Shown here piece by piece: positions 1-9,749 of a stretch of 64,000 bases of DNA; the first letter of the stretch is position 1, and each line of letters begins with the position of its first letter. Below the pieces are notes generated by a model. That model saw only the letters and a list, made by a program, of their open reading frames with translations. It did no database searches and was not told the origin of the DNA. The translations under genes and the position numbers were made by a program. Origin of the DNA: Felis catus (lineage: Eukaryota); assembly GCF_018350175.1 (NCBI RefSeq), contig NC_058381.1:57908001-57972000 (forward strand), given 5' to 3'.

Positions 1-1561
1 TGGGGGGGGGGGAGGGGGTTGGGGAAAGAATAACAGCCCGTCCCCATAATCCAGAATAATGACCCCATCTCAAATCAGAAGATTAGCAACGTTGGGGCAC
101 CTGGGTGGCTCAGTCAGTTAAGTATCAGGCTCTTGATTTTGGCTCAGGTCATGATCATGCAGTTTGTGGGTTCTGGCCCCGCGTCTTGGGATTCTCTCTC
201 CCTCCCTCTCTCTCTGCCTCTGTCTCTCTCTCTCTCCCAAAATAAATAAATACACTTAAAAATATATACTAACAACCTTAATACCCCTCTGCCAGTAACA
301 TACATATTCCAGGGTTTACGACGCCAACATCTACCTACCAAACAGGCCCAGGCCCCTACAGCCCAGCAGTGGCAGTTGAGTGTAAGCCCTGGTTTAGTTC
401 CAAGGCCCAGGGGCCTACTAATTCCCCGGGGGGGGGGGGGGGGGGCGGTGCGGGGGCCTAGCTGTTCTGGGCCCAGCCCTGGTTGCTGAGCCCATGGGGT
501 GCTGTGGCCTCCGGGTTATCTCCTTGCTGCAGGAACCCACCCTGGGAGCCTCCTAGGGGCCCCAGAGTGGAGGTGGCCCTGTTGAGGGAGCTCTCGTGAG
601 CCTGAGCAGAGGGTCCTCTGCCAGCAGAGGCATGAGGCTCCTTCAGCTGCTCTGCTTGGCCCTGCTGGGTGAGCCACTGGGGACATCGCGCGGGGGGCAG
701 GAGGGAGCCCTGCCAGGGCCTCGGGGAAGCAGGCTCGTGCAGGGGTGCCAGTGAGCACAGGAGAGGGACCTGGAGGCACAGACACTTCTGGAAGCGCAGG
801 AGAGAGGGAGAGACGTGGGCTTGGGTCTCAGACCAGCCCCTTGTGGCCCCTTTACCGATCGCGGCATCATTCTGGGCCCGCTATTTACTCATCCACAAAA
901 TGACTGATGACACCAAATGTTGAGGCCTCGAAAGAGCTTTTGTGAGTGAAGACGCTTGCTGAGTCCTAGGCTTCCCTTCTGGCCTCGGCAGGAGGCTCTC
1001 CGGGCGGCCTCTGCGTCCTGGGCTCTCTGCTTACTCCCCTATCACCCTCTCCTCTGGAAGCCACCAGCAGCTTCTCTGCGGAGCAGGAGGAGGCCTAGTG
1101 GCCCGCGTGAAGGAGACGGCTGGTGGAGGTTGCTGATAGAGAGGGGGTGTTTGTTGGCAGACAGCTGGACGATTCTGGAACTTGGCCTCAACTCCTGCGG
1201 GGTCTTGGGGGGGTGCGGAGAGGAGCGGGGTGAGCAGGCCAGTGTGGGACCTCCAGGGGCCATGGGGCCAGGAGAGCGCTGGCTTCCACCTGGGCTGTGG
1301 TGGGGGAGGGAGAGGGAGCAGCGCGCATGTCCCTGGGCAGGCTTGTCCAGTCTTTTTACCCCAGGGGCCCGATCTGGAACAGGAGCCCTTCCTGGAGCCC
1401 CCCAGCTCTGCCAGGTGGGGGTGGCCCCAGAGAGGGCTGGGGGCATTCCAGCGGGGCGTCTCTGCCCCGAGGAAGAGGAAGTCCGGGCTTCCTCAGAGGT
1501 CCGGCCAAGGGAGCCTGACTTACTCTCAGAGGCAGCCGGAGGGTGGCAGGGTCCCCGCTCT

Positions 1562-1575
1562 CCACCAGGGGGCGG
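1562..1575 (+). promoter_or_regulatory. CTCF-binding motif (candidate)
   Basis: CCACCAGGGGGCGG matches the CTCF core consensus; it lies in a CpG-rich patch next to GC boxes (1605-1650). Confidence 0.55.
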
Positions 1576-2891
1576 TACAGAACCAGGGGGAGGGGACGCT
1601 CCTGGGCCCGCCTCCGCGCCTGCCTCCCGCCCTGCTCTGCCCCCGCCCCCATTTCTAGCCCTGTGACCCTTAAGGTCAAGGTGGTGGGTCACCTCCTCCT
1701 CTCCACCAGGCTGGGGGCTGGCGCGCCTCCCTGACTTATCTCAACCGTTACCTTCCCTGGGTCACGGGGTCGCAGAATTGGCACCTGCCCCTATTCCACT
1801 GAAGGGTGGGCCTCGCGCGAAGGCGGCAGAGGCAGAACTATCATTTCCTCATTCGCTTTAAAAACAAACGCGTCAGTTGTGGTGTTTCTGCTAAAAAGAG
1901 ACAGCAGCTTGAGGCGGCAGACATTCCTGTCCCCGACTCCGGGAAGTACCTGTCCCCCCCCCTCCCCCACCCCCCGTCTGCCCCCCGCCCCGCCCCGCCC
2001 CTGCCTTCTGCTCAGAGTCTTACCCAACAACCTTCGCTAACCCAACTCCTGAGAGATCAGCTGCTAAATCTTTCATTCATTCAGCACAGCCTGTTGGAGC
2101 ACCTGTTCGGTGCCAGGCACTGTTCTAGGCCCCAAGACGGATGTGCAGAAGCAAAACAGAGGTCTCCCGTCCTCACAAAGCATACTTTCCAGTGGGGCTG
2201 GGAGGGGGGACACAGACGACGGTGAAAATAAGCGATTTGCACAGTGTGCTGGGATGTGGTAAGCTCTAGACAAAAGCAAGCAGGTAAGAGTAGAAGGGAA
2301 TACGGGGTGGGGCGGGGCGGGGGCAGCAGCCTTTACTGGGAGATCGTCACTGAGAAGGAGACACCCAAGCTGGAGGAGGAAATGGCCTGAGCGCAGGAAG
2401 CAGTAGGGAGGGGAGAGCTTGATGGGGAGGAGGGTTGAGCAGTTACAGGGACAGGGTTTGCGCCGAAGACCTGGGCCGCTTTCCCCTTCACGGGTTCTGT
2501 GTTGAGAAGAGACGGGATGGGAACCACGGGGGCGTCCCAGGGGCCTTCGGGCTGCTCCCCGGATCCAGAGGCAAGATCTGGTGATAGCCAGAGCCCTGGG
2601 GGGTGGGGGGGGGGGGGAGAAGCGATCAAGACATTCTGGAGGTCAGGCCAGTGGCACGTGCTGAGGACACAAGGTGATGCGCTGCGAAAGAGCCGCGGGA
2701 GATGATCCCGAGGTTTTTGGCCCGAGCGACTCAGAGGACTGGCTAAGTGAAGTGGAGTCTTGCCATAGGATGTTGTGCAGCTAAACGCCTCAGTGGGAGC
2801 AAGAAAGTTGGACACGAGAGATTGGAAGTGAAGGAACCAAAGAACCAAGATACTGAAAAGAGTATCTCTGTGTGTTTTGAAATCCCCAAGA

Positions 2892-3011
2892 GGGGGGTGG
2901 GAGGGAGGGGAGGGTGGGTGATGGGTACTGAGGAGGGCACCTTTTGGGATGAGCGCTGGGTGTTGTATGGAAACCAATTTGACAATAAACTTCATATATT
3001 GAAAAAAAAAA
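2892..3011 (+). mobile_element. 5'-truncated carnivore L1 3' end with A tail
   Basis: L1 3'UTR sequence (gggatgagcgctgggtgttgtatggaaaccaatttgacaataaa), A tail, and perfect TSD TGAAATCCCCAAGA at 2878-2891 and 3012-3025. Confidence 0.85.
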
Positions 3012-4499
3012 TGAAATCCCCAAGAATTCGGGCAAGTGTGGTACCGTGGGAACCGGGGGCAAGAATCTTCAGGGAGTGATAGGCGTTTCTAGGTAATGGT
3101 AGCCCAGGGGAGCAGGGCAGAATACGTCTGAAGATACGAGGTTCCAGGATGGTGTTTAGGGAGGAAGGAGGGAGACTAGTCCAGAAGTGTCGAGGGGAAG
3201 TCCACCCCTGTCCTCCCAGGTCAGTGCTGGGGAGGCTGTGGGGGACCCCCAGCACCAGGGACAACAGCTAGGGTAGGCGGAGCTGGGGGCCTGGGGGTCC
3301 CCGTGGGGCCGCCATGAACACATGACAATGTTCTCATTCAGCAGGTGGGGGTGGGGGGATCTGGTTGAAGCATGGATCCAAGCTAGATTGTACTCCCTCC
3401 CCGAGCGAGAGCAAAGGAACCTCGGATTGTCCCCCATTCGTTCCTAAAACCTGTTTGGAATTTTTGAGTGACGTTCTAGACCACTTCATAAGAGCCACAT
3501 TGGAGGGGGTGCTGTATTAATTCCTTGCCGCTGCAGCCAATTACCCCGGGGGTGGGGGCAGGGTAGGGCTGGAAGGTATCTTTTGGGAAGAGACAATTCA
3601 ACCCTCAAAGGTGGGCTGGCTGTTCAGCATCTGATCCCTGGGCCCCACCTTAGGTCTAAGAAATTGGATCTTTGGGTTTGGGACTCAAATCTCCAAGCCT
3701 CCGGTTATGACACACACATACACAAGTCTGGAGAGCCGCCTAGCCACGGGGGCGGCGGCAGCTCGGCTCTCCCCGCTTACACCCCAAGGGGCTTCCTTCT
3801 TCCCTTAGCAACAGAAGGAGGCTCTGCGCGGCCACCCACTCAGCCCAGCGCAGCCTGGCTCCGCTTCGGGTCTGAGCGTGGGCTTGTCTCCACTCCACCG
3901 CATCATTCCAGTGCTCTGACGCGGTGATGAATTTTTAAGTGCGTGCCGGAGCACTCACTACCCGTGGGTTAAATGCATCAACTAAACAATCAAAAGACAA
4001 CGACCACGCCGGTCCTGAAAAGTGACCCCCCCCACCCTGCACCCCCCCCCACCCCTCTTACAGAGCTCACGGGACTCTGGTCCGTGAACTTATGTAAATC
4101 AAGCTTCTATAAATGGCCATCGAAATGGAAACAAAGGCGGCCAGCTTTTCCTTTGAACTTTTATAGGTCCTCCTTCCGTTGAAGGGAGCAAAAAAAAAAA
4201 AAAAAAAAAAAAATGTCTCCAGACACAAAGGTCCCCTGGAAGCAAGGCCACCTCTGGTGGAGAACCTCTGATCTAGAAAGAACTATGCTTAGGGGTCAGA
4301 AACTTAAGCACACCTGGGAAATGTCTCTGGAGGAAGAACATTCTGGTTGGTTCCAGTTCTCTGCTCGGTGAGCAGTTTTCTGATGGCGGTGCGATTTCCA
4401 GAGCCAGTGTGCCCAGCAGGGCAAGGGTGGTGCACAAGGTATATATTTCGATTTGGTAAACCCTTTTCTCTACGCCCCAAGCACTGCCCCCGCACACTA

Positions 4500-4781
4500 T
4501 TTTTTTAATGTTTATTATTTTGAGAGAGAGAGAGAGAGTCATATATGTCTTCCAGTTTGCTTCTTCCTCCTTTTTATATGTTTATTTTTGAGAGAGAGAG
4601 AGACAGACAGAGCACGAGTGGGGGAGGGGCAGAGAGAGAGAGGGAGACCCAGAATCCCAAGCAGGCTCCAGGCTCTGAGCTGTCAGCACAGAGCCCAACG
4701 GGGGGCTCGAACTCACGAGCCGTGAGGTCATGACCTGAGCCAAAGTCGTACACTCAACCGACTGAGCCCCCCAGGCGCCCT
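4500..4781 (-). mobile_element. CanSINE with doubled tail and captured foreign flank
   Basis: tRNA-derived CanSINE head and body on the minus strand, (GA)n tract, and a second tail at 4500-4537. Confidence 0.85.
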
Positions 4782-5867
4782 TCCCGCCCCCCCACTATTC
4801 TTCAACAGGCACCATTAACATGAACAATCCGACCCTCCCCCGCAAACCCCCATTCCGAAAGCAGCTCTGTTTCCTCCTGGCCTCTCTGCCTTGGAGAATT
4901 CACTATTGGCAGCGAGAGGGCCAGCCAGTAGGAAGCTCTTAGAAATGTCTTCTGCATCAGGTCGACTCCAGGATCCGCCTACAAAACAAAGAAGTTACTT
5001 CCAAGTTCCGCGTCTTGATGGACGAGCGCCTTCGGGGCGTGGCCGGGCAATGGGTCTGGTCCTGGGTTTTCCAGGGGCTGGGAGCATCCAGTCTCCTTCC
5101 GGAATCCTGCTTTCCCAAGTGGCATCTTTCTCTCTGGCTCAGCTGGTCCCTGTGGATCTGGGTCATACCCTCTACCCTCGCGTTCCGACGGTCCCTTTAA
5201 ACTAGACATTGACCCCTCTGGGAGCAGGGGCCGGGCATCCCAGGCACCCTGGTGGGTCTGGCAGAGGAGGCCTCTGATACCAGGGGGCAGACAGGCCTTC
5301 CCGGTCTCAGCTCCCCCTCCCCTCCCCCGTCCAGCATCAGGTCCGAGCTCGGGGCCAGCTGATCGGGTGGCTGGTCGACTTGGCACCTAACTTGTCTCTA
5401 TCTCGGTGAGGAAATCCCCAGCTCGGCGCGTCCTCGAGGCGCGCACTTTATCGCATTAGGAGATGCCTGGACCGCGCATGCGCTCCCGGCTGGACATGCG
5501 CATTAGGAGCTGCCGTCTCCTGTAGCGGGTGGTTCAGCCAACCAACCCGAGATGGGTGGTGTCACCACGAGGCACACCAACGCCTGTCCTGCGAGTTCCA
5601 GTCGACAGACTGGTTGAACCTAGAAGTTGAATCCAGCGTCCGCTCTCCCGACCTCTGTTCAAACCTCTCCGTGCTTCCTACTCACATCCTAATTTCATTT
5701 TGTTTTTGTAATAAAATATTCTGGACAAAAAAGAGTCTAAGTCCCAGAGGTAGACTTTTATCCAGTAGGGTTTCCTTCCTTCCTTCCTTCCTCCTTTCTT
5801 CTTCTTTTTCTCTCTTCCTCCTTCCCTCCATCTTTTCCCTCCCCCCTCCCCTCCCCTACTTTCTCCT

Positions 5868-6220
5868 TTCTAAATTGAGGTGAGGTGAATTTCACTTAGC
5901 ACAAAATTAACCATTTTAAAGTGACGATTCACAGCATCTGATGCATTCACAATGTTGTGCAACCACACCTCTATCTAGTTCCAGAACATTTCCATCACCC
6001 CAAAAGGAAAACCCCTACACAATTAGCGGTCACTTCCCATTTCCCCCTCCGCCGGCCCCTGCCCACTACCAGTCTGCTTTCTGTCTCAGGATTTTCCTAT
6101 TCTGGACATTTCCCACGAGCGGAATAGAACAGATGTTGCCTTTTGTGTCTGACTTCTTTCCCCGGGCGTAATGTTTTTAAGGTTCGTCTGTGCCGTAGCA
6201 TGGATCGGAACGTCACTCCC
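5868..6220 (-). mobile_element. Old L1M-type 3' fragment
   Basis: Characteristic aaattaaccattttaaagtg...cattcacaatgttgtgcaacc...atcaccccaaaaggaaaccc motif. Confidence 0.7.
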
Positions 6221-6462
6221 TTTTTTTTTTTTTTTTAATTTTTTTATTTATTTTTATTTTTATTTTATTTTTGAGAGAGAGAGAGAGAGAGACAGAGTGC
6301 GAGCAGAGGAGGGGCACAGAGAGAGGGAGACACAGAATCCGAAGCAGGCTCCAGGCTCTGAGCTGTCAGCACAGACCCTGACGCGGGGCTCGAACTCACA
6401 AACCATGAGATCATGATCTGAGCCAGTCAGACGCCCAACTGACTAAGCCACCCAGGAGCTCC
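6221..6462 (-). mobile_element. CanSINE without TSD (possible recombinant)
   Basis: Full SINE on the minus strand; flanks cgtcactccc and tagaatccag do not match. Confidence 0.8.
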
Positions 6463-6548
6463 TAGAATCCAGATTCTTCTAAGTGACAGTTCTTGTTCTG
6501 AAGGAACATGTATTCCAGTAAAAGGGTCAGTACTGAAAAAATATAAAT

Positions 6549-6668
6549 AGGGGCTGCCAGATAAATTTTGCACAGGACACATTCATACCGAAAAATTATT
6601 CATTATTTACCTGAAACTCAAATTTAACTGGGCACCCTGTATTTTTATTTGGTAAGTCTGGCAACCCA
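6549..6668. mobile_element. MER53-like hAT MITE fragment
   Basis: Terminal inverted repeats ggg(g)ctgccaga ... tctggcaaccc and internal aaatttaactgggcaccctgtattt. Confidence 0.55.
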
Positions 6669-6754
6669 GAATGTACCATAAGAACAAAACCAAATGTGAA
6701 ATTGTGTGGTACACACTACAAGTAGGGTTGAAACCCAGACATATGACAGATGGA

Positions 6755-6947
6755 GGGGCGCCTGGGTGGCTCAGTCGGTTAAGCGTCCGACTTCAGCTCA
6801 GGTCATGATCTCACAGTCTGTGAGTTCGAGCCCCATGTCGGGCTCTGTGGTGACAGCTCGGAGCCTGGAGCCTGCTTTGGATTCTGTGTCTCCCTCTCTC
6901 TCCGCCCCTCCCCTGCTCATGCTCTGTCTCTCTCTGTCTCAAAAATA

Positions 6948-6986
<39 letters not shown>

Positions 6987-7008
6987 ATATTAAAAAAAAA
7001 AAAAAAAA
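6755..7008 (+). mobile_element. CanSINE
   Basis: GGGGCGCCTGGGTGGCTCAGTCGGTTAAG head, (AAAT)n tail, TSD GACAGATGGA. Confidence 0.9.
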
Positions 7009-8407
7009 GACAGATGGAGTAATCCAGAAGGCTGCCTGGAGGAGGCAGCAATGACAGGCCTCCAAGCCCAGTAGGCACTTTGAAACGAGGGAATTTGCTG
7101 GGGAGAGGGTGTTAAAGTCACGCAGTCATGCCTTGCTAACCTCTTCCACCCTATCGGAGCCCATGTCTCAGCTACAGGCTAACTCCACCTTGCTGGACGG
7201 AGACACGGGCCCCAGGGTGGAGATTTCCTGCCAGGTGCCCTCAGGCAGCCCACCCATCGCCTCTAGCCTTGTCGGGAAGGACCCACAGGTCCCCGTGCAG
7301 CGGGGACCGAACTACGGGCAGTCTGCCAACTTCTTCCCACTTACCCCGATGTCAGCCTGGCATTGGAGCCAGGCTGAAAAGGACTTCAGTGGCCACCCCA
7401 GCCCGTTCAAGCTGGTGTCCCCAGGTGAGAGGGCCCCTTGGTTTCCAGAGGGGCGGTTGGCACTTCTGGGTGGGTCAGCGGGAGGTAGGAGAGCCCCGCC
7501 CTGGCCCTGCCTAAGGGAGGCCAGCTCAGCCACCCCCGCCTCCCTCCCGGGGCAGCTGCCCCTGGTACCCACCTCTGTGCTGGCTGGTTGGTAGCCTCAC
7601 CTCCATTGCTGCTGTTGCCTCTGGGTTGCTGGACCAAGCACGCGGATCGGGTAGGAAACGGGTGCAGGATGTGGGGGACAGCGAGAAGGAGGTCGGGTAG
7701 CGGGTTTGGAGGACAGGGCTGCCTCCAGGGCAAACGAAGGGCCATGTGGCTCATGCATCACCTGCAAGAGTTTATGAAGGGCCTACTGTGTGCCACGTGT
7801 CTGCTGAGGGCTTGCACTTCCGTGGCTTTATCTGACCCCGACCAACACTCCCCTGTGATGGAGTCAGTTGGCCTCCGGGTGGGGCATTCATTCGCCTGTA
7901 TTCCTGACGGGTCTGGGGAGGGACACGAGGAGCGGGGTTGAAGCCTCCTGGGGACCAGGCTGGATCAGGGGCTTCTGTTCCCCGTGGGAACCACATAGGT
8001 CGGTGCTTCCCAGCTGGTGACAAGAGGCAGGGGCTGGACCTCCTGGGGTCCCGTGTCTAAGGCTCTCAGTTCACTGACTTGTAAAGCGACCGGGCCTTTG
8101 TGTTGTCTGTCCCCAAGCCCCACAGGCCTCTGCGTGTTGCACCTGTCTGGCCTTTGGCAGCAACAACCTCTGCCCCGTGAACTTCTCACCTGCCTTGGTC
8201 TCTAGACACGGCCATCTCCTGGTTGGCTTCCTCCCTCCCTAGCCAAGCTTTTCAGTGGCCGCTGTCCGGGAGTCTATCCTTGGCACTCTCCTCGTCTCAC
8301 ATCAGTGTCCCTTCCTCCCATCTCTGTCCTTTCCAGAGGCCAGACTCCTGGGAGAGCCGCGTCACCTCTCTGAGCCTCGGTTTTCCCTTTTATAAAGGGG
8401 ATAGAGA

Positions 8408-8615
8408 GGGGCACCTGGGTGACTCAGTCGGTTGAGCGACCGACTTTGGCTCAGGTCATGATCTCGCAGTGTGTGAGTTCGAGCCCTGCGTCGGGCTCTG
8501 TGCTGACAGCTCGGAGCCTGGAGCCTGCTTGGGATTCTCTCTGCCCCTCCCCTGCTCATGCTCTGTGTCTCTCTGTCTCTCAATAATAAATAAACGTTAA
8601 AAAATTTTTTTTTAA
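8408..8615 (+). mobile_element. CanSINE
   Basis: Typical head, CT-rich tract and A-rich tail. Confidence 0.85.
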
Positions 8616-9749
8616 TATATAAATGGGATACGGAGACCAGGCTCTCCCTCGCCACGTGACCAGGAGCCGACGCTTGCCCTCTTGGTGACTCAGTGCCCCC
8701 CTTCATTTAGTGGAGTGACTAAGCCTTATACCCCTTCTCCTGCCCAGGGCACTGATGCGCTTGGCACCATAAAATTCCTGGAGGCCTTGGGAGGGGTGGC
8801 TGAGAGGTGTGCTTGCCTAACCTGGAATCTTAACTCCTTTATCATCAAGGCTGTGGCCAGACGATGCGGGCTCGGCAGAGTCCCCTCAGGAGGGCCCCGG
8901 CTGTCTGTCCCCTACAGAAGGACTCGCCATTTGAATGAAGGAAATCCCTGCCGGCCCTGATTCTTGAAGGCTGGTGTTCTTCCACGAACACACATGGTGT
9001 TAGTGTGACAATTTCAGGACGGGGATGGAATGAATAGAAGGGCCTGTGATGGAAGGGGAGGTCCACAGAAAGTGGGGGGACCTCTGTGTGGCCCCTGTCC
9101 TCACCGTCCCTGCAGGTCTGGGGAGAGGGTGGGGTAGACTGTGAAAAGGCCCAGCTGCAACAACTCACTCAGCGTCCCCTCCTCCTCCCCCACCCCTGCT
9201 CCCCTCTTCCCTGGTGTGGCACCCCATCTCCTGGTGGCCTAGTCGCCTGTCACTGTGTGGCTCACCTGGGAGGATTCTGAGCACCGCCCCCCTCTCCCCC
9301 CCAGCACCCACTCATTAATCCTTACCCGCAACTAGCAAAAACTGTCTGGAATTTTTCCCTTCCGGTCAGTCCGTGGCCCCTAGGGAGCGCACCCCCACCC
9401 CACCCCCCATCAGCCTTCTCTGTTCAGATGCTCTAAAGATGTTGGGGTGGGGGAGGGCTGGGTTAAACTCTGCCCTCTGCCTGTCACCCTGGAAACTTTG
9501 TTTCTGTCTGCATACCATCTTGGGCATGGAAGTCTGAAGTCACACACCCCTGGGGCCTGGCTCAGCCCCGGAAAATTTGCGGAGCGGGCACCCCCAGGCT
9601 TAGCTCCAGACGGGAGCAAAGAGCGACAGGCCAGTCGAGGAGGGCGTCCAGGCTGTGGGCTGGGGTTTGGGATGGAATGGGGAGAAAAGAGGGGGTGCTT
9701 CTGAGCCTGGGTGAGGCCCAGAACGGCATCTATCTGCTGGGCTTCCTGG

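What the first reader, a model, noticed from the sequence alone, without database searches (positions are those of the whole stretch)
632..8960. IL-40 (C17orf99) cytokine gene appears inactivated by several independent lesions
Seen in sequence: (1) exon 2 (1061-1093) is followed by CCTAGTG instead of a GT donor; (2) no exon encoding the first Ig domain is recognisable between 1094 and 7157; (3) the acceptor of the second-Ig exon reads GG (7156-7157), not AG; (4) the second Ig cysteine is Ser (WHWSQA vs recalled human WFWCQA); (5) the next exon's acceptor is also GG (7549-7550), and a TGGT duplication (7585-7592) creates TAG at 7592-7594. Established: C17orf99 encodes the B-cell-associated cytokine IL-40, linked to IgA production. 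Inference: five separate lesions are unlikely to be assembly error and indicate lineage-specific loss of an immune cytokine, which I cannot confirm has been described.
Basis: partly seen in the sequence, partly recalled or inferred. Interest (0 to 1): 0.85.

Follow-up and report, generated by a model that had tools for sequence, protein, structure and literature searches.

The report
Cat IL-40 gene is a pseudogene
In this cat-family genome the gene for the B-cell cytokine IL-40 (C17orf99) sits in its normal place but is broken in many independent ways, so cats are probably a natural knockout of a gene that mice need for normal IgA levels.

Summary

- **Locus:** it is the true C17orf99 locus. 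It has introns, a Pfam Ig_C17orf99 hit, and SYNGR2, AFMID and BIRC5 downstream.
- **Lesions:**
  - Exon 2 has no GT donor, and read-through meets an in-frame TAG.
  - The first Ig exon and its intron flanks are gone.
  - The acceptors of the Ig2 exon and the hydrophobic-tail exon read GG.
  - Ig2 has lost its second cysteine, five other residues invariant in 17 mammals, and one codon.
  - A TGGT duplication makes TAG in the tail exon, which carries a further net -1 shift.
  - The last exon changes frame twice relative to panda.
- **Is it real DNA?** An independent DNA run matches 7020-8431 and 8588-9000 exactly.
- **Other cats:** the clouded leopard's only IL-40 model carries four of the invariant-residue changes and the codon loss, so decay predates the split of these two cat lineages.
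- **Caveats:**
  - Whales, camelids and horse have annotated IL-40 without Ig1, so Ig1 loss alone is not inactivating.
  - The exon 2 and Ig1 lesions were not checked in reads.
  - RNA data were uninformative.
  - A weak cryptic splice could still give a degenerate product.

Verdict: unitary pseudogene. It is not described in the literature I could search. Moderate interest.

The parts
632..668 (+). Exon 1: start codon and the first 12 codons of the signal peptide (MRLLQLLCLALL). Donor GT at 669-670 is intact.
   Evidence: tblastn matches orthologue N-termini at 632-667.
1061..1098 (+). Exon 2 (1061-1093, ATSSFSAEQEE, acceptor AG intact), then CC where the donor GT should be, then an in-frame TAG at 1096-1098.
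   Evidence: The 33-nt exon length and the phase match ferret, horse and whale proteins.
1099..6693 (+). The stretch where the first Ig exon should lie. Neither the exon nor its flanks are recognisable, so it was deleted rather than decayed.
   Evidence: Ig2, of the same age, is still 60-67% identical to caniform Ig2.
6694..7157 (+). The 3' part of the intron before Ig2. It is orthologous to other mammals' introns and interrupted by a SINE at about 6760-7010. It ends in GG (7156-7157) instead of AG.
   Evidence: Genomic ORFs of other species (P0006, P0003) align to 6694-6750 and 7012-7146. Sequence read.
7158..7424 (+). Second Ig exon. It is an open frame but degenerate: Cys to Ser at 7367-7369, five other invariant residues changed, and one codon lost near 7334. 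Donor GT at 7425-7426 is intact.
   Evidence: Pfam 47.9 bits against 85-102 in intact orthologues. Alignment, tree. Identical in the independent DNA run.
7425..7550 (+). Short intron of 126 nt, open and in frame with Ig2. It ends in GG (7549-7550) instead of AG.
   Evidence: The ORF 7055-7591 is continuous. Ferret and horse genomic ORFs read L-T-G at this junction where the window reads L-P-G.
7551..7650 (+). Exon for the hydrophobic C-terminal tail. The TGGT tandem duplication (7585-7592) makes TAG at 7592-7594. The exon is 100 nt where 97+4 are expected, so there is a further net -1 shift near its 3' end.
   Evidence: homology moves between frames. The ENA-derived ORF P0058 ends at the same stop. 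Identical in the independent DNA run.
8850..8938 (+). Last exon (alternative C-terminus; acceptor AG at 8848-8849 intact). Similarity to the panda C-terminus passes through all three frames, which implies two frame changes.

Best explanation
This is the orthologous C17orf99/IL-40 locus of a cat-family genome, and it is a unitary pseudogene. It sits at its ancestral position upstream of SYNGR2.

Shown in the sequence:
- The donor of exon 2 is lost.
- The whole first Ig exon is missing.
- The acceptors of the Ig2 exon and the tail exon are lost.
- The structural cysteine of the remaining Ig domain is replaced.
- The reading frames of the tail exon and the last exon are broken.

Inferred:
- A transcript from the intact start would end after about 24 codons at the TAG just past exon 2, so no IL-40 is made.
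- The damage began before Felinae and Pantherinae split.
- Since then the locus has drifted neutrally.
For: - **Identity and synteny:** Pfam Ig_C17orf99 hits. A SYNGR2-like exon 1 peptide lies at about 10146. AFMID and BIRC5 motifs and a BIR domain lie downstream.
- **Lesions in the sequence:**
- **Ig1 absent:**
- **Real DNA:** the independent run X1 is identical over 7020-8431 and 8588-9000. An ENA-derived ORF is 99.4% identical and ends at the same TAG.
- **Relaxed constraint:** Pfam gives 47.9 bits (window) and 52.2 (Neofelis) against 85-102 in nine orthologous proteins. 6 of 17 invariant columns are changed, against 0-2 in 15 of the other 16 mammals and 4 in the sengi. The felid stem is 0.42 changes per site, against 0.18 for wolf, about 0.12 for mustelids and about 0.08 for bear.
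- **Shared with another cat lineage:** Neofelis XP_058560921.1 has F9S, Y35S, P55S, C71S and the codon deletion, and its tail is frame-shifted. The model begins in the SINE and reads intron as coding.
- **Annotation pattern:** among the 120 best of 143 homologues of ferret IL-40 there are many caniforms and pangolins but no feliform. The only feliform protein found anywhere is the 150-aa Neofelis fragment.
Against: - The Ig2 frame is still open for 179 codons (7055-7591).
- One weak GT donor (CTA|GTGGCC, after 1097) combined with AG acceptors at 7072 or 7126 would join the signal peptide to Ig2 in frame.
- Ig1-less IL-40 is annotated as protein-coding in whales, camelids and horse.
- The last exon keeps its acceptor.
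- The exon 2 donor and the Ig1 absence were not checked in reads.
- No RNA data from a relevant tissue were examined. The one raw RNA run gave zero depth, which says little.
- No search for a paralogue elsewhere in the genome was possible.
Confidence: 0.88

Rival explanations
1. The locus still makes a shortened, secreted, single-domain protein. It would consist of the signal peptide joined by cryptic splicing to the Ig2 frame and would end at the TAG in the tail exon or in the last exon. This would be a felid-specific form, comparable to the Ig1-less IL-40 of whales and camelids.
For: - An in-frame, stop-free GT-AG pair exists: donor after 1097, acceptor before 7072 or 7126.
- The ORF is open over 7055-7591.
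- Ig1-less proteins are annotated in other orders.
- NCBI annotates a 'protein IL-40' in Neofelis.
Against: - The donor matches the consensus only at GT and position +3, and the acceptors lack a good pyrimidine tract.
- Ig2 has lost its disulfide cysteine and five other invariant residues, and its Pfam score is half that of intact orthologues.
- Between the window and Neofelis, the exon is no better conserved than the adjacent intron: 3 of 79 codons differ in the exon and 2 of 33 in the intron.
- The Neofelis model is frame-shifted at the end of Ig2 and starts inside a SINE.
- No RNA support was seen.
Confidence: 0.07
2. The lesions are assembly or sequencing errors, or private to the sequenced animal, and the species has a working gene.
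For: The exon 2 donor and the Ig1 gap were not covered by the reads laid. Homopolymer-rich, GC-rich sequence surrounds exon 1.
Against: - An independent run from another sample and study is identical over 7020-8431 and 8588-9000.
- Fourteen runs from five studies hold all sampled words of 7020-8400.
- An ENA-derived ORF ends at the same stop.
- Neofelis shares the Ig2 changes.
- The window has no N.
Confidence: 0.02
3. The remnant is kept as a non-coding transcript or regulatory element and not as a protein gene.
For: - Exon 1, exon 2 and the upstream region remain similar to horse 5' sequence.
- A small RNA-library contig from a second organism lies on 7628-7859.
Against: That contig has a depth of 2.4, lies downstream of the tail exon and may be DNA carry-over. 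No transcription was seen in the raw RNA run. Nothing marks conservation beyond what neutral drift leaves.
Confidence: 0.03

Closest known systems
C17orf99 / IL-40 of caniform carnivores (ferret M3YPG8, 247 aa; dog, bear, seal models)
   Same: Same genomic neighbourhood, the same exon order and phases for exons 1 and 2, Ig2, the tail exon and the last exon. The signal peptide and the tail segment (LAGSLTSIAAV) are nearly identical.
   Different: The caniform genes have both Ig exons, both cysteines in each, and an open frame to ...WTRL. The window lacks Ig1, three splice sites and the Ig2 cysteine, and its tail and last exons are frame-shifted.
Ig1-less IL-40 of whales, camelids and horse (e.g. 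Megaptera, 146 aa; Vicugna, 160 aa; Equus caballus, 257 aa)
   Same: The first Ig domain is absent, and exon 2 would join Ig2 directly in the same phase.
   Different: Those proteins keep the signal peptide, both Ig2 cysteines, Pfam scores of 85-102 bits and an intact hydrophobic tail. The window keeps none of the last three.
XP_058560921.1 'protein IL-40' of Neofelis nebulosa (150 aa)
   Same: It is 91% identical to the window's genomic translation over 7058-7423 and 96% identical within Ig2. It has the same Cys-to-Ser change and the same codon loss.
   Different: It is an annotated protein model, but its first 27 residues come from the SINE at 6835-6915 and the next 33 from intron. It has no signal peptide, no Ig1 and no tail, so it looks like an annotation artefact on the same pseudogene.
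Other lineage-specific unitary pseudogenes in Felidae (from my own knowledge: TAS1R2, UGT1A6)
   Same: A single-copy gene conserved in other mammals is disabled by several lesions shared across cat species.
   Different: This one is an immune signalling gene, and no ecological reason for the loss is apparent. The comparison is from memory and was not tested here.

Membership tests
C17orf99 / IL-40 orthologue | Ig domain of the Pfam family Ig_C17orf99 (PF17736) | tested here: met
   E=1.5e-12, 47.9 bits against a cut-off of 26.
C17orf99 / IL-40 orthologue | Conserved position next to SYNGR2, AFMID and BIRC5, with introns (so not a processed copy) | tested here: met
   SYNGR2-like exon 1 peptide at about 10146, AFMID and BIRC5 motifs, BIR domain at about 47.4 kb. 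The exons are separated by introns. The gene order is compared with the human order from memory.
C17orf99 / IL-40 orthologue | Two Ig domains, each with a cysteine pair, behind a signal peptide | tested here: not met
   Ig1 is absent and the second Ig2 cysteine is Ser. The signal-peptide exons are present.
Unitary pseudogene | Disabling lesions: stops, frameshifts, lost splice sites, lost exon | tested here: met
   At least eight separate lesions.
Unitary pseudogene | Lesions are real and shared by several individuals or species | tested here: met
   The independent run is identical over Ig2, the tail exon and the last exon. The ENA-derived ORF has the same stop. Neofelis shares the Ig2 changes. 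The exon 2 donor and the Ig1 gap were not covered by reads.
Unitary pseudogene | Relaxed constraint on what remains | tested here: met
   Protein-level tests only: branch length, invariant columns, Pfam scores. dN/dS could not be computed because no orthologous DNA was available.
Unitary pseudogene | No intact paralogue elsewhere in the genome | not testable with these tools
   Only this window is held. The protein searches found no other felid IL-40, which is weak support.
Unitary pseudogene | No spliced coding transcript | tested here: inconclusive
   A raw oligo-dT RNA run, of which 2% was read, gave zero depth on the unique parts. The tissue is unknown.

The most novel reading that the evidence does not exclude
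IL-40 was lost early, in the stem of all cats and perhaps of all Feliformia. The amount of change on the felid stem is about what neutral drift over the whole stem would give. Whales, camelids and horse independently shed only Ig1.

Together this would mean two things:
- The conserved core of IL-40 is Ig2 plus the hydrophobic tail, that is, a membrane-tethered form and not only a secreted cytokine.
- Cats are a natural knockout, so genes co-lost with IL-40 in cats could point to its still unknown receptor.
Probability: 0.3. Interest if true: 0.6.

Novelty: new member of a known kind. Interest (0 to 1): 0.45.

Why it matters
IL-40 is an orphan cytokine. According to the review PMC10923619, only mammals express it, its receptor is unknown, and knockout mice have a general IgA deficiency, including in milk.

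- A whole carnivore family living without it shows the gene is dispensable in some mammals.
- It cautions against using cats as a model for IL-40 biology, and against assays or antibodies that assume a feline IL-40.
- It gives a lineage in which to look for compensating or co-lost partners such as the receptor.
- It flags the only felid 'protein IL-40' RefSeq model found here as a likely artefact.
- The Ig1-less forms in whales, camelids and horse suggest that Ig2 plus the tail is the part under selection.

Tried and rejected
- **Fetching orthologous DNA:** No genomic DNA of other felids or feliforms could be fetched, so splice sites and dN/dS could not be compared at nucleotide level.
- **Third protein search:** searching with the Ig2 exon returned only P0001.
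- **Looking for Ig1:** I used gene models, a profile, and intron-flank ORFs from other species and found nothing. This rules out 'Ig1 present but decayed'.
- **RNA check:** the raw oligo-dT run had no reads on the unique parts. The contig runs showed only unspliced pieces, and the SINE at 8405-8620 swamped the joint and loose-end tables. This gives no verdict on expression.
- **Literature:** seven searches on C17orf99 or IL-40 with pseudogene, mammals, gene loss and carnivores, Felis catus, evolution and orthologs, feline, and TOGA found nothing on loss in cats.
- **Rejected reading:** 'Ig1 absence proves inactivation' fails because of the whale, camelid and horse proteins.
- **Handling notes:**
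Exons were searched apart, by reference, and the joined step was left out.
  - Human entries appeared in one hit list and were not fetched or used.
Full report
**Locus.** The + strand of the window from 632 to 8938 carries the remains of C17orf99/IL-40.
- Exon 1 (632-668) and exon 2 (1061-1093) together encode a signal peptide close to that of dog and horse.
- The stretch 7160-7423 translates to a domain that Pfam assigns to Ig_C17orf99 (E=1.5e-12, 47.9 bits).
- Downstream lie a SYNGR2-like exon 1 peptide at about 10146, AFMID and BIRC5 motifs and a BIR domain at about 47.4 kb.
- From memory, that is the gene order of human 17q25.3. With introns in place, this is the orthologous locus and not a processed copy.
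- The carnivore SINEs, and 96% identity of Ig2 to the Neofelis nebulosa model, place the genome in the cat family.

**The normal gene.** Proteins found with the Ig2 exon and with ferret IL-40 show the usual layout:
- exon 1 and a 33-nt exon 2 (signal peptide);
- an Ig1 exon and an Ig2 exon;
- a 97-nt exon for a hydrophobic C-terminal tail. This tail is present in the mouse RefSeq precursor and in ferret, dog, bear, rhinoceros and armadillo;
- a last exon that also serves as an alternative C-terminus in panda and primates.

**The five observations.** All are confirmed.
- Exon 2 is followed by CC instead of GT, and read-through stops at TAG 1096-1098.
- Ig2 (7158-7424) is preceded by GG at 7156-7157.
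- The second cysteine is AGC (Ser) at 7367-7369.
- The tail exon (7551-7650) is preceded by GG at 7549-7550.
- TGGT at 7585-7588 is repeated at 7589-7592 and creates an in-frame TAG at 7592-7594. Without the repeat the frame reads exactly like dog.
- Ig1 is absent. A profile of seven Ig1 domains has no hit better than E=0.2 in the whole window. tblastn with gene models and with genomic ORFs of other mammals that carry Ig1 plus its intron flanks finds only low-complexity noise. Ig2 is still 60-67% identical to caniform Ig2, so an Ig1 of the same age would be visible. It was therefore deleted, not eroded.

**Further lesions.**
- The tail exon is 100 nt where 97+4 are expected, and similarity to orthologues moves to another frame near its end. 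There is therefore a further net -1 shift.
- The last exon (8850-8938) has an intact acceptor, but its similarity to the panda C-terminus passes through all three frames.
- Ig2 has lost one codon.
- Ig2 has changed 6 of the 17 columns invariant in 17 other mammals (F9S, Y35S, P55S, C71S, N75K, P88S). Most other species change 0-2 such columns, and the sengi changes 4.

**Is it real?**
- An independent DNA run of the same organism, from another sample and study, has a contig identical to 7020-8431 and another identical to 8588-9000.
- Fourteen runs from five studies hold all sampled words of 7020-8400.
- An ORF from ENA assemblies is 99.4% identical and ends at the same TAG.
- The exon 2 donor and the Ig1 gap were not covered by the single reads call allowed.

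**Constraint.**
- Pfam scores for Ig2 are 47.9 bits (window) and 52.2 (Neofelis), against 85-102 in nine orthologous proteins.
- In a maximum-likelihood tree of Ig2 the felid stem is 0.42 changes per site. Wolf is 0.18, mustelids about 0.12 and bear about 0.08 from the same node.
- Between the window and Neofelis, the exon (3 differences in 79 codons plus a frame shift) is no better kept than the intron read by that model (2 in 33).
- These are protein-level tests. dN/dS could not be done without orthologous DNA.

**Extent.**
- The only feliform IL-40 protein in the collections is XP_058560921.1 of Neofelis (150 aa).
- Its first 27 residues map to the SINE at 6835-6915 and the rest to contiguous 7058-7423, reading straight through the dead acceptor.
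- It shares four invariant-site changes and the codon deletion.
- The decay therefore predates the Felinae-Pantherinae split. By my recollection of published felid phylogenies that is roughly 11 million years ago.
- The size of the stem branch suggests a much earlier start, possibly in early Feliformia. That is inference.

**Nuances.**
- Whales, camelids and horse have annotated IL-40 without Ig1 but with the signal peptide, both Ig2 cysteines and the tail. Ig1 loss alone does not kill the gene.
- The 126-nt intron before the tail exon is open and in frame, and a horse isoform retains it. The GG acceptor there therefore weighs less than the TAG.
- An exhaustive scan shows one stop-free GT donor (after 1097) that could join in frame to AG acceptors at 7072 or 7126. 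Both sites are weak, and the product would be a cysteine-less Ig2 ending at the TAG. I give this reading 7%.

**RNA.** The raw oligo-dT run (2% read) gave no reads on the unique parts, and no spliced joints were seen. This is uninformative because the tissue is unknown.

**Novelty.** Seven literature searches found nothing on C17orf99 loss in cats. According to a review, the receptor is unknown and knockout mice are IgA-deficient. Large gene-loss tables that are not held as text may already list this loss.

**Limits.**
- No paralogue search of the whole genome was possible.

Noticed in passing
proteins P0200, P0206, P0203, P0207, P0020 (no window coordinates): Whale, camelid and horse IL-40 models (145-257 aa) lack the first Ig domain. 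They keep the signal peptide, an Ig2 with both cysteines (Pfam 85-102 bits) and the hydrophobic tail. Ig1 seems to have been lost or skipped independently in several orders. Donkey and rhinoceros models still have it.
   Followed up: partly
window 6835-6915 and 7058-7423: The RefSeq model 'protein IL-40' of Neofelis nebulosa (XP_058560921.1) starts inside the SINE orthologous to 6835-6915 and reads intron 7058-7157 as coding. It looks like an annotation artefact on a pseudogene.
   Followed up: yes
window 6221-6470: A minus-strand SINE with its A-rich tail at 6221-6275. By eye I saw no matching target-site duplication in its flanks. Sequence right of it, from 6694, is orthologous to the intron before Ig2, which fits, but the joint itself was not tested.
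   Followed up: partly
window 7425-7550: The short intron between Ig2 and the tail exon is open and in frame here and in genomic ORFs of many mammals. Its first part is conserved at the peptide level (GERAPWFPEG...). One horse isoform retains it, so a retained-intron coding isoform may be widespread.
   Followed up: no
window 7628-7859: A 232-nt contig from an RNA library of a second, coded organism lies just downstream of the tail exon with one difference (depth 2.4). It may be weak transcription or DNA carry-over in a relative.
   Followed up: no
Ig2 tree: The equid Ig2 branch (0.47 changes per site) is as long as the felid one although both cysteines are kept. The horse lineage may be under relaxed or positive selection.
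   Followed up: no
window 1-20 and 427-446: Long G homopolymers flank the region upstream of exon 1. They are possible weak points of the assembly.
   Followed up: no
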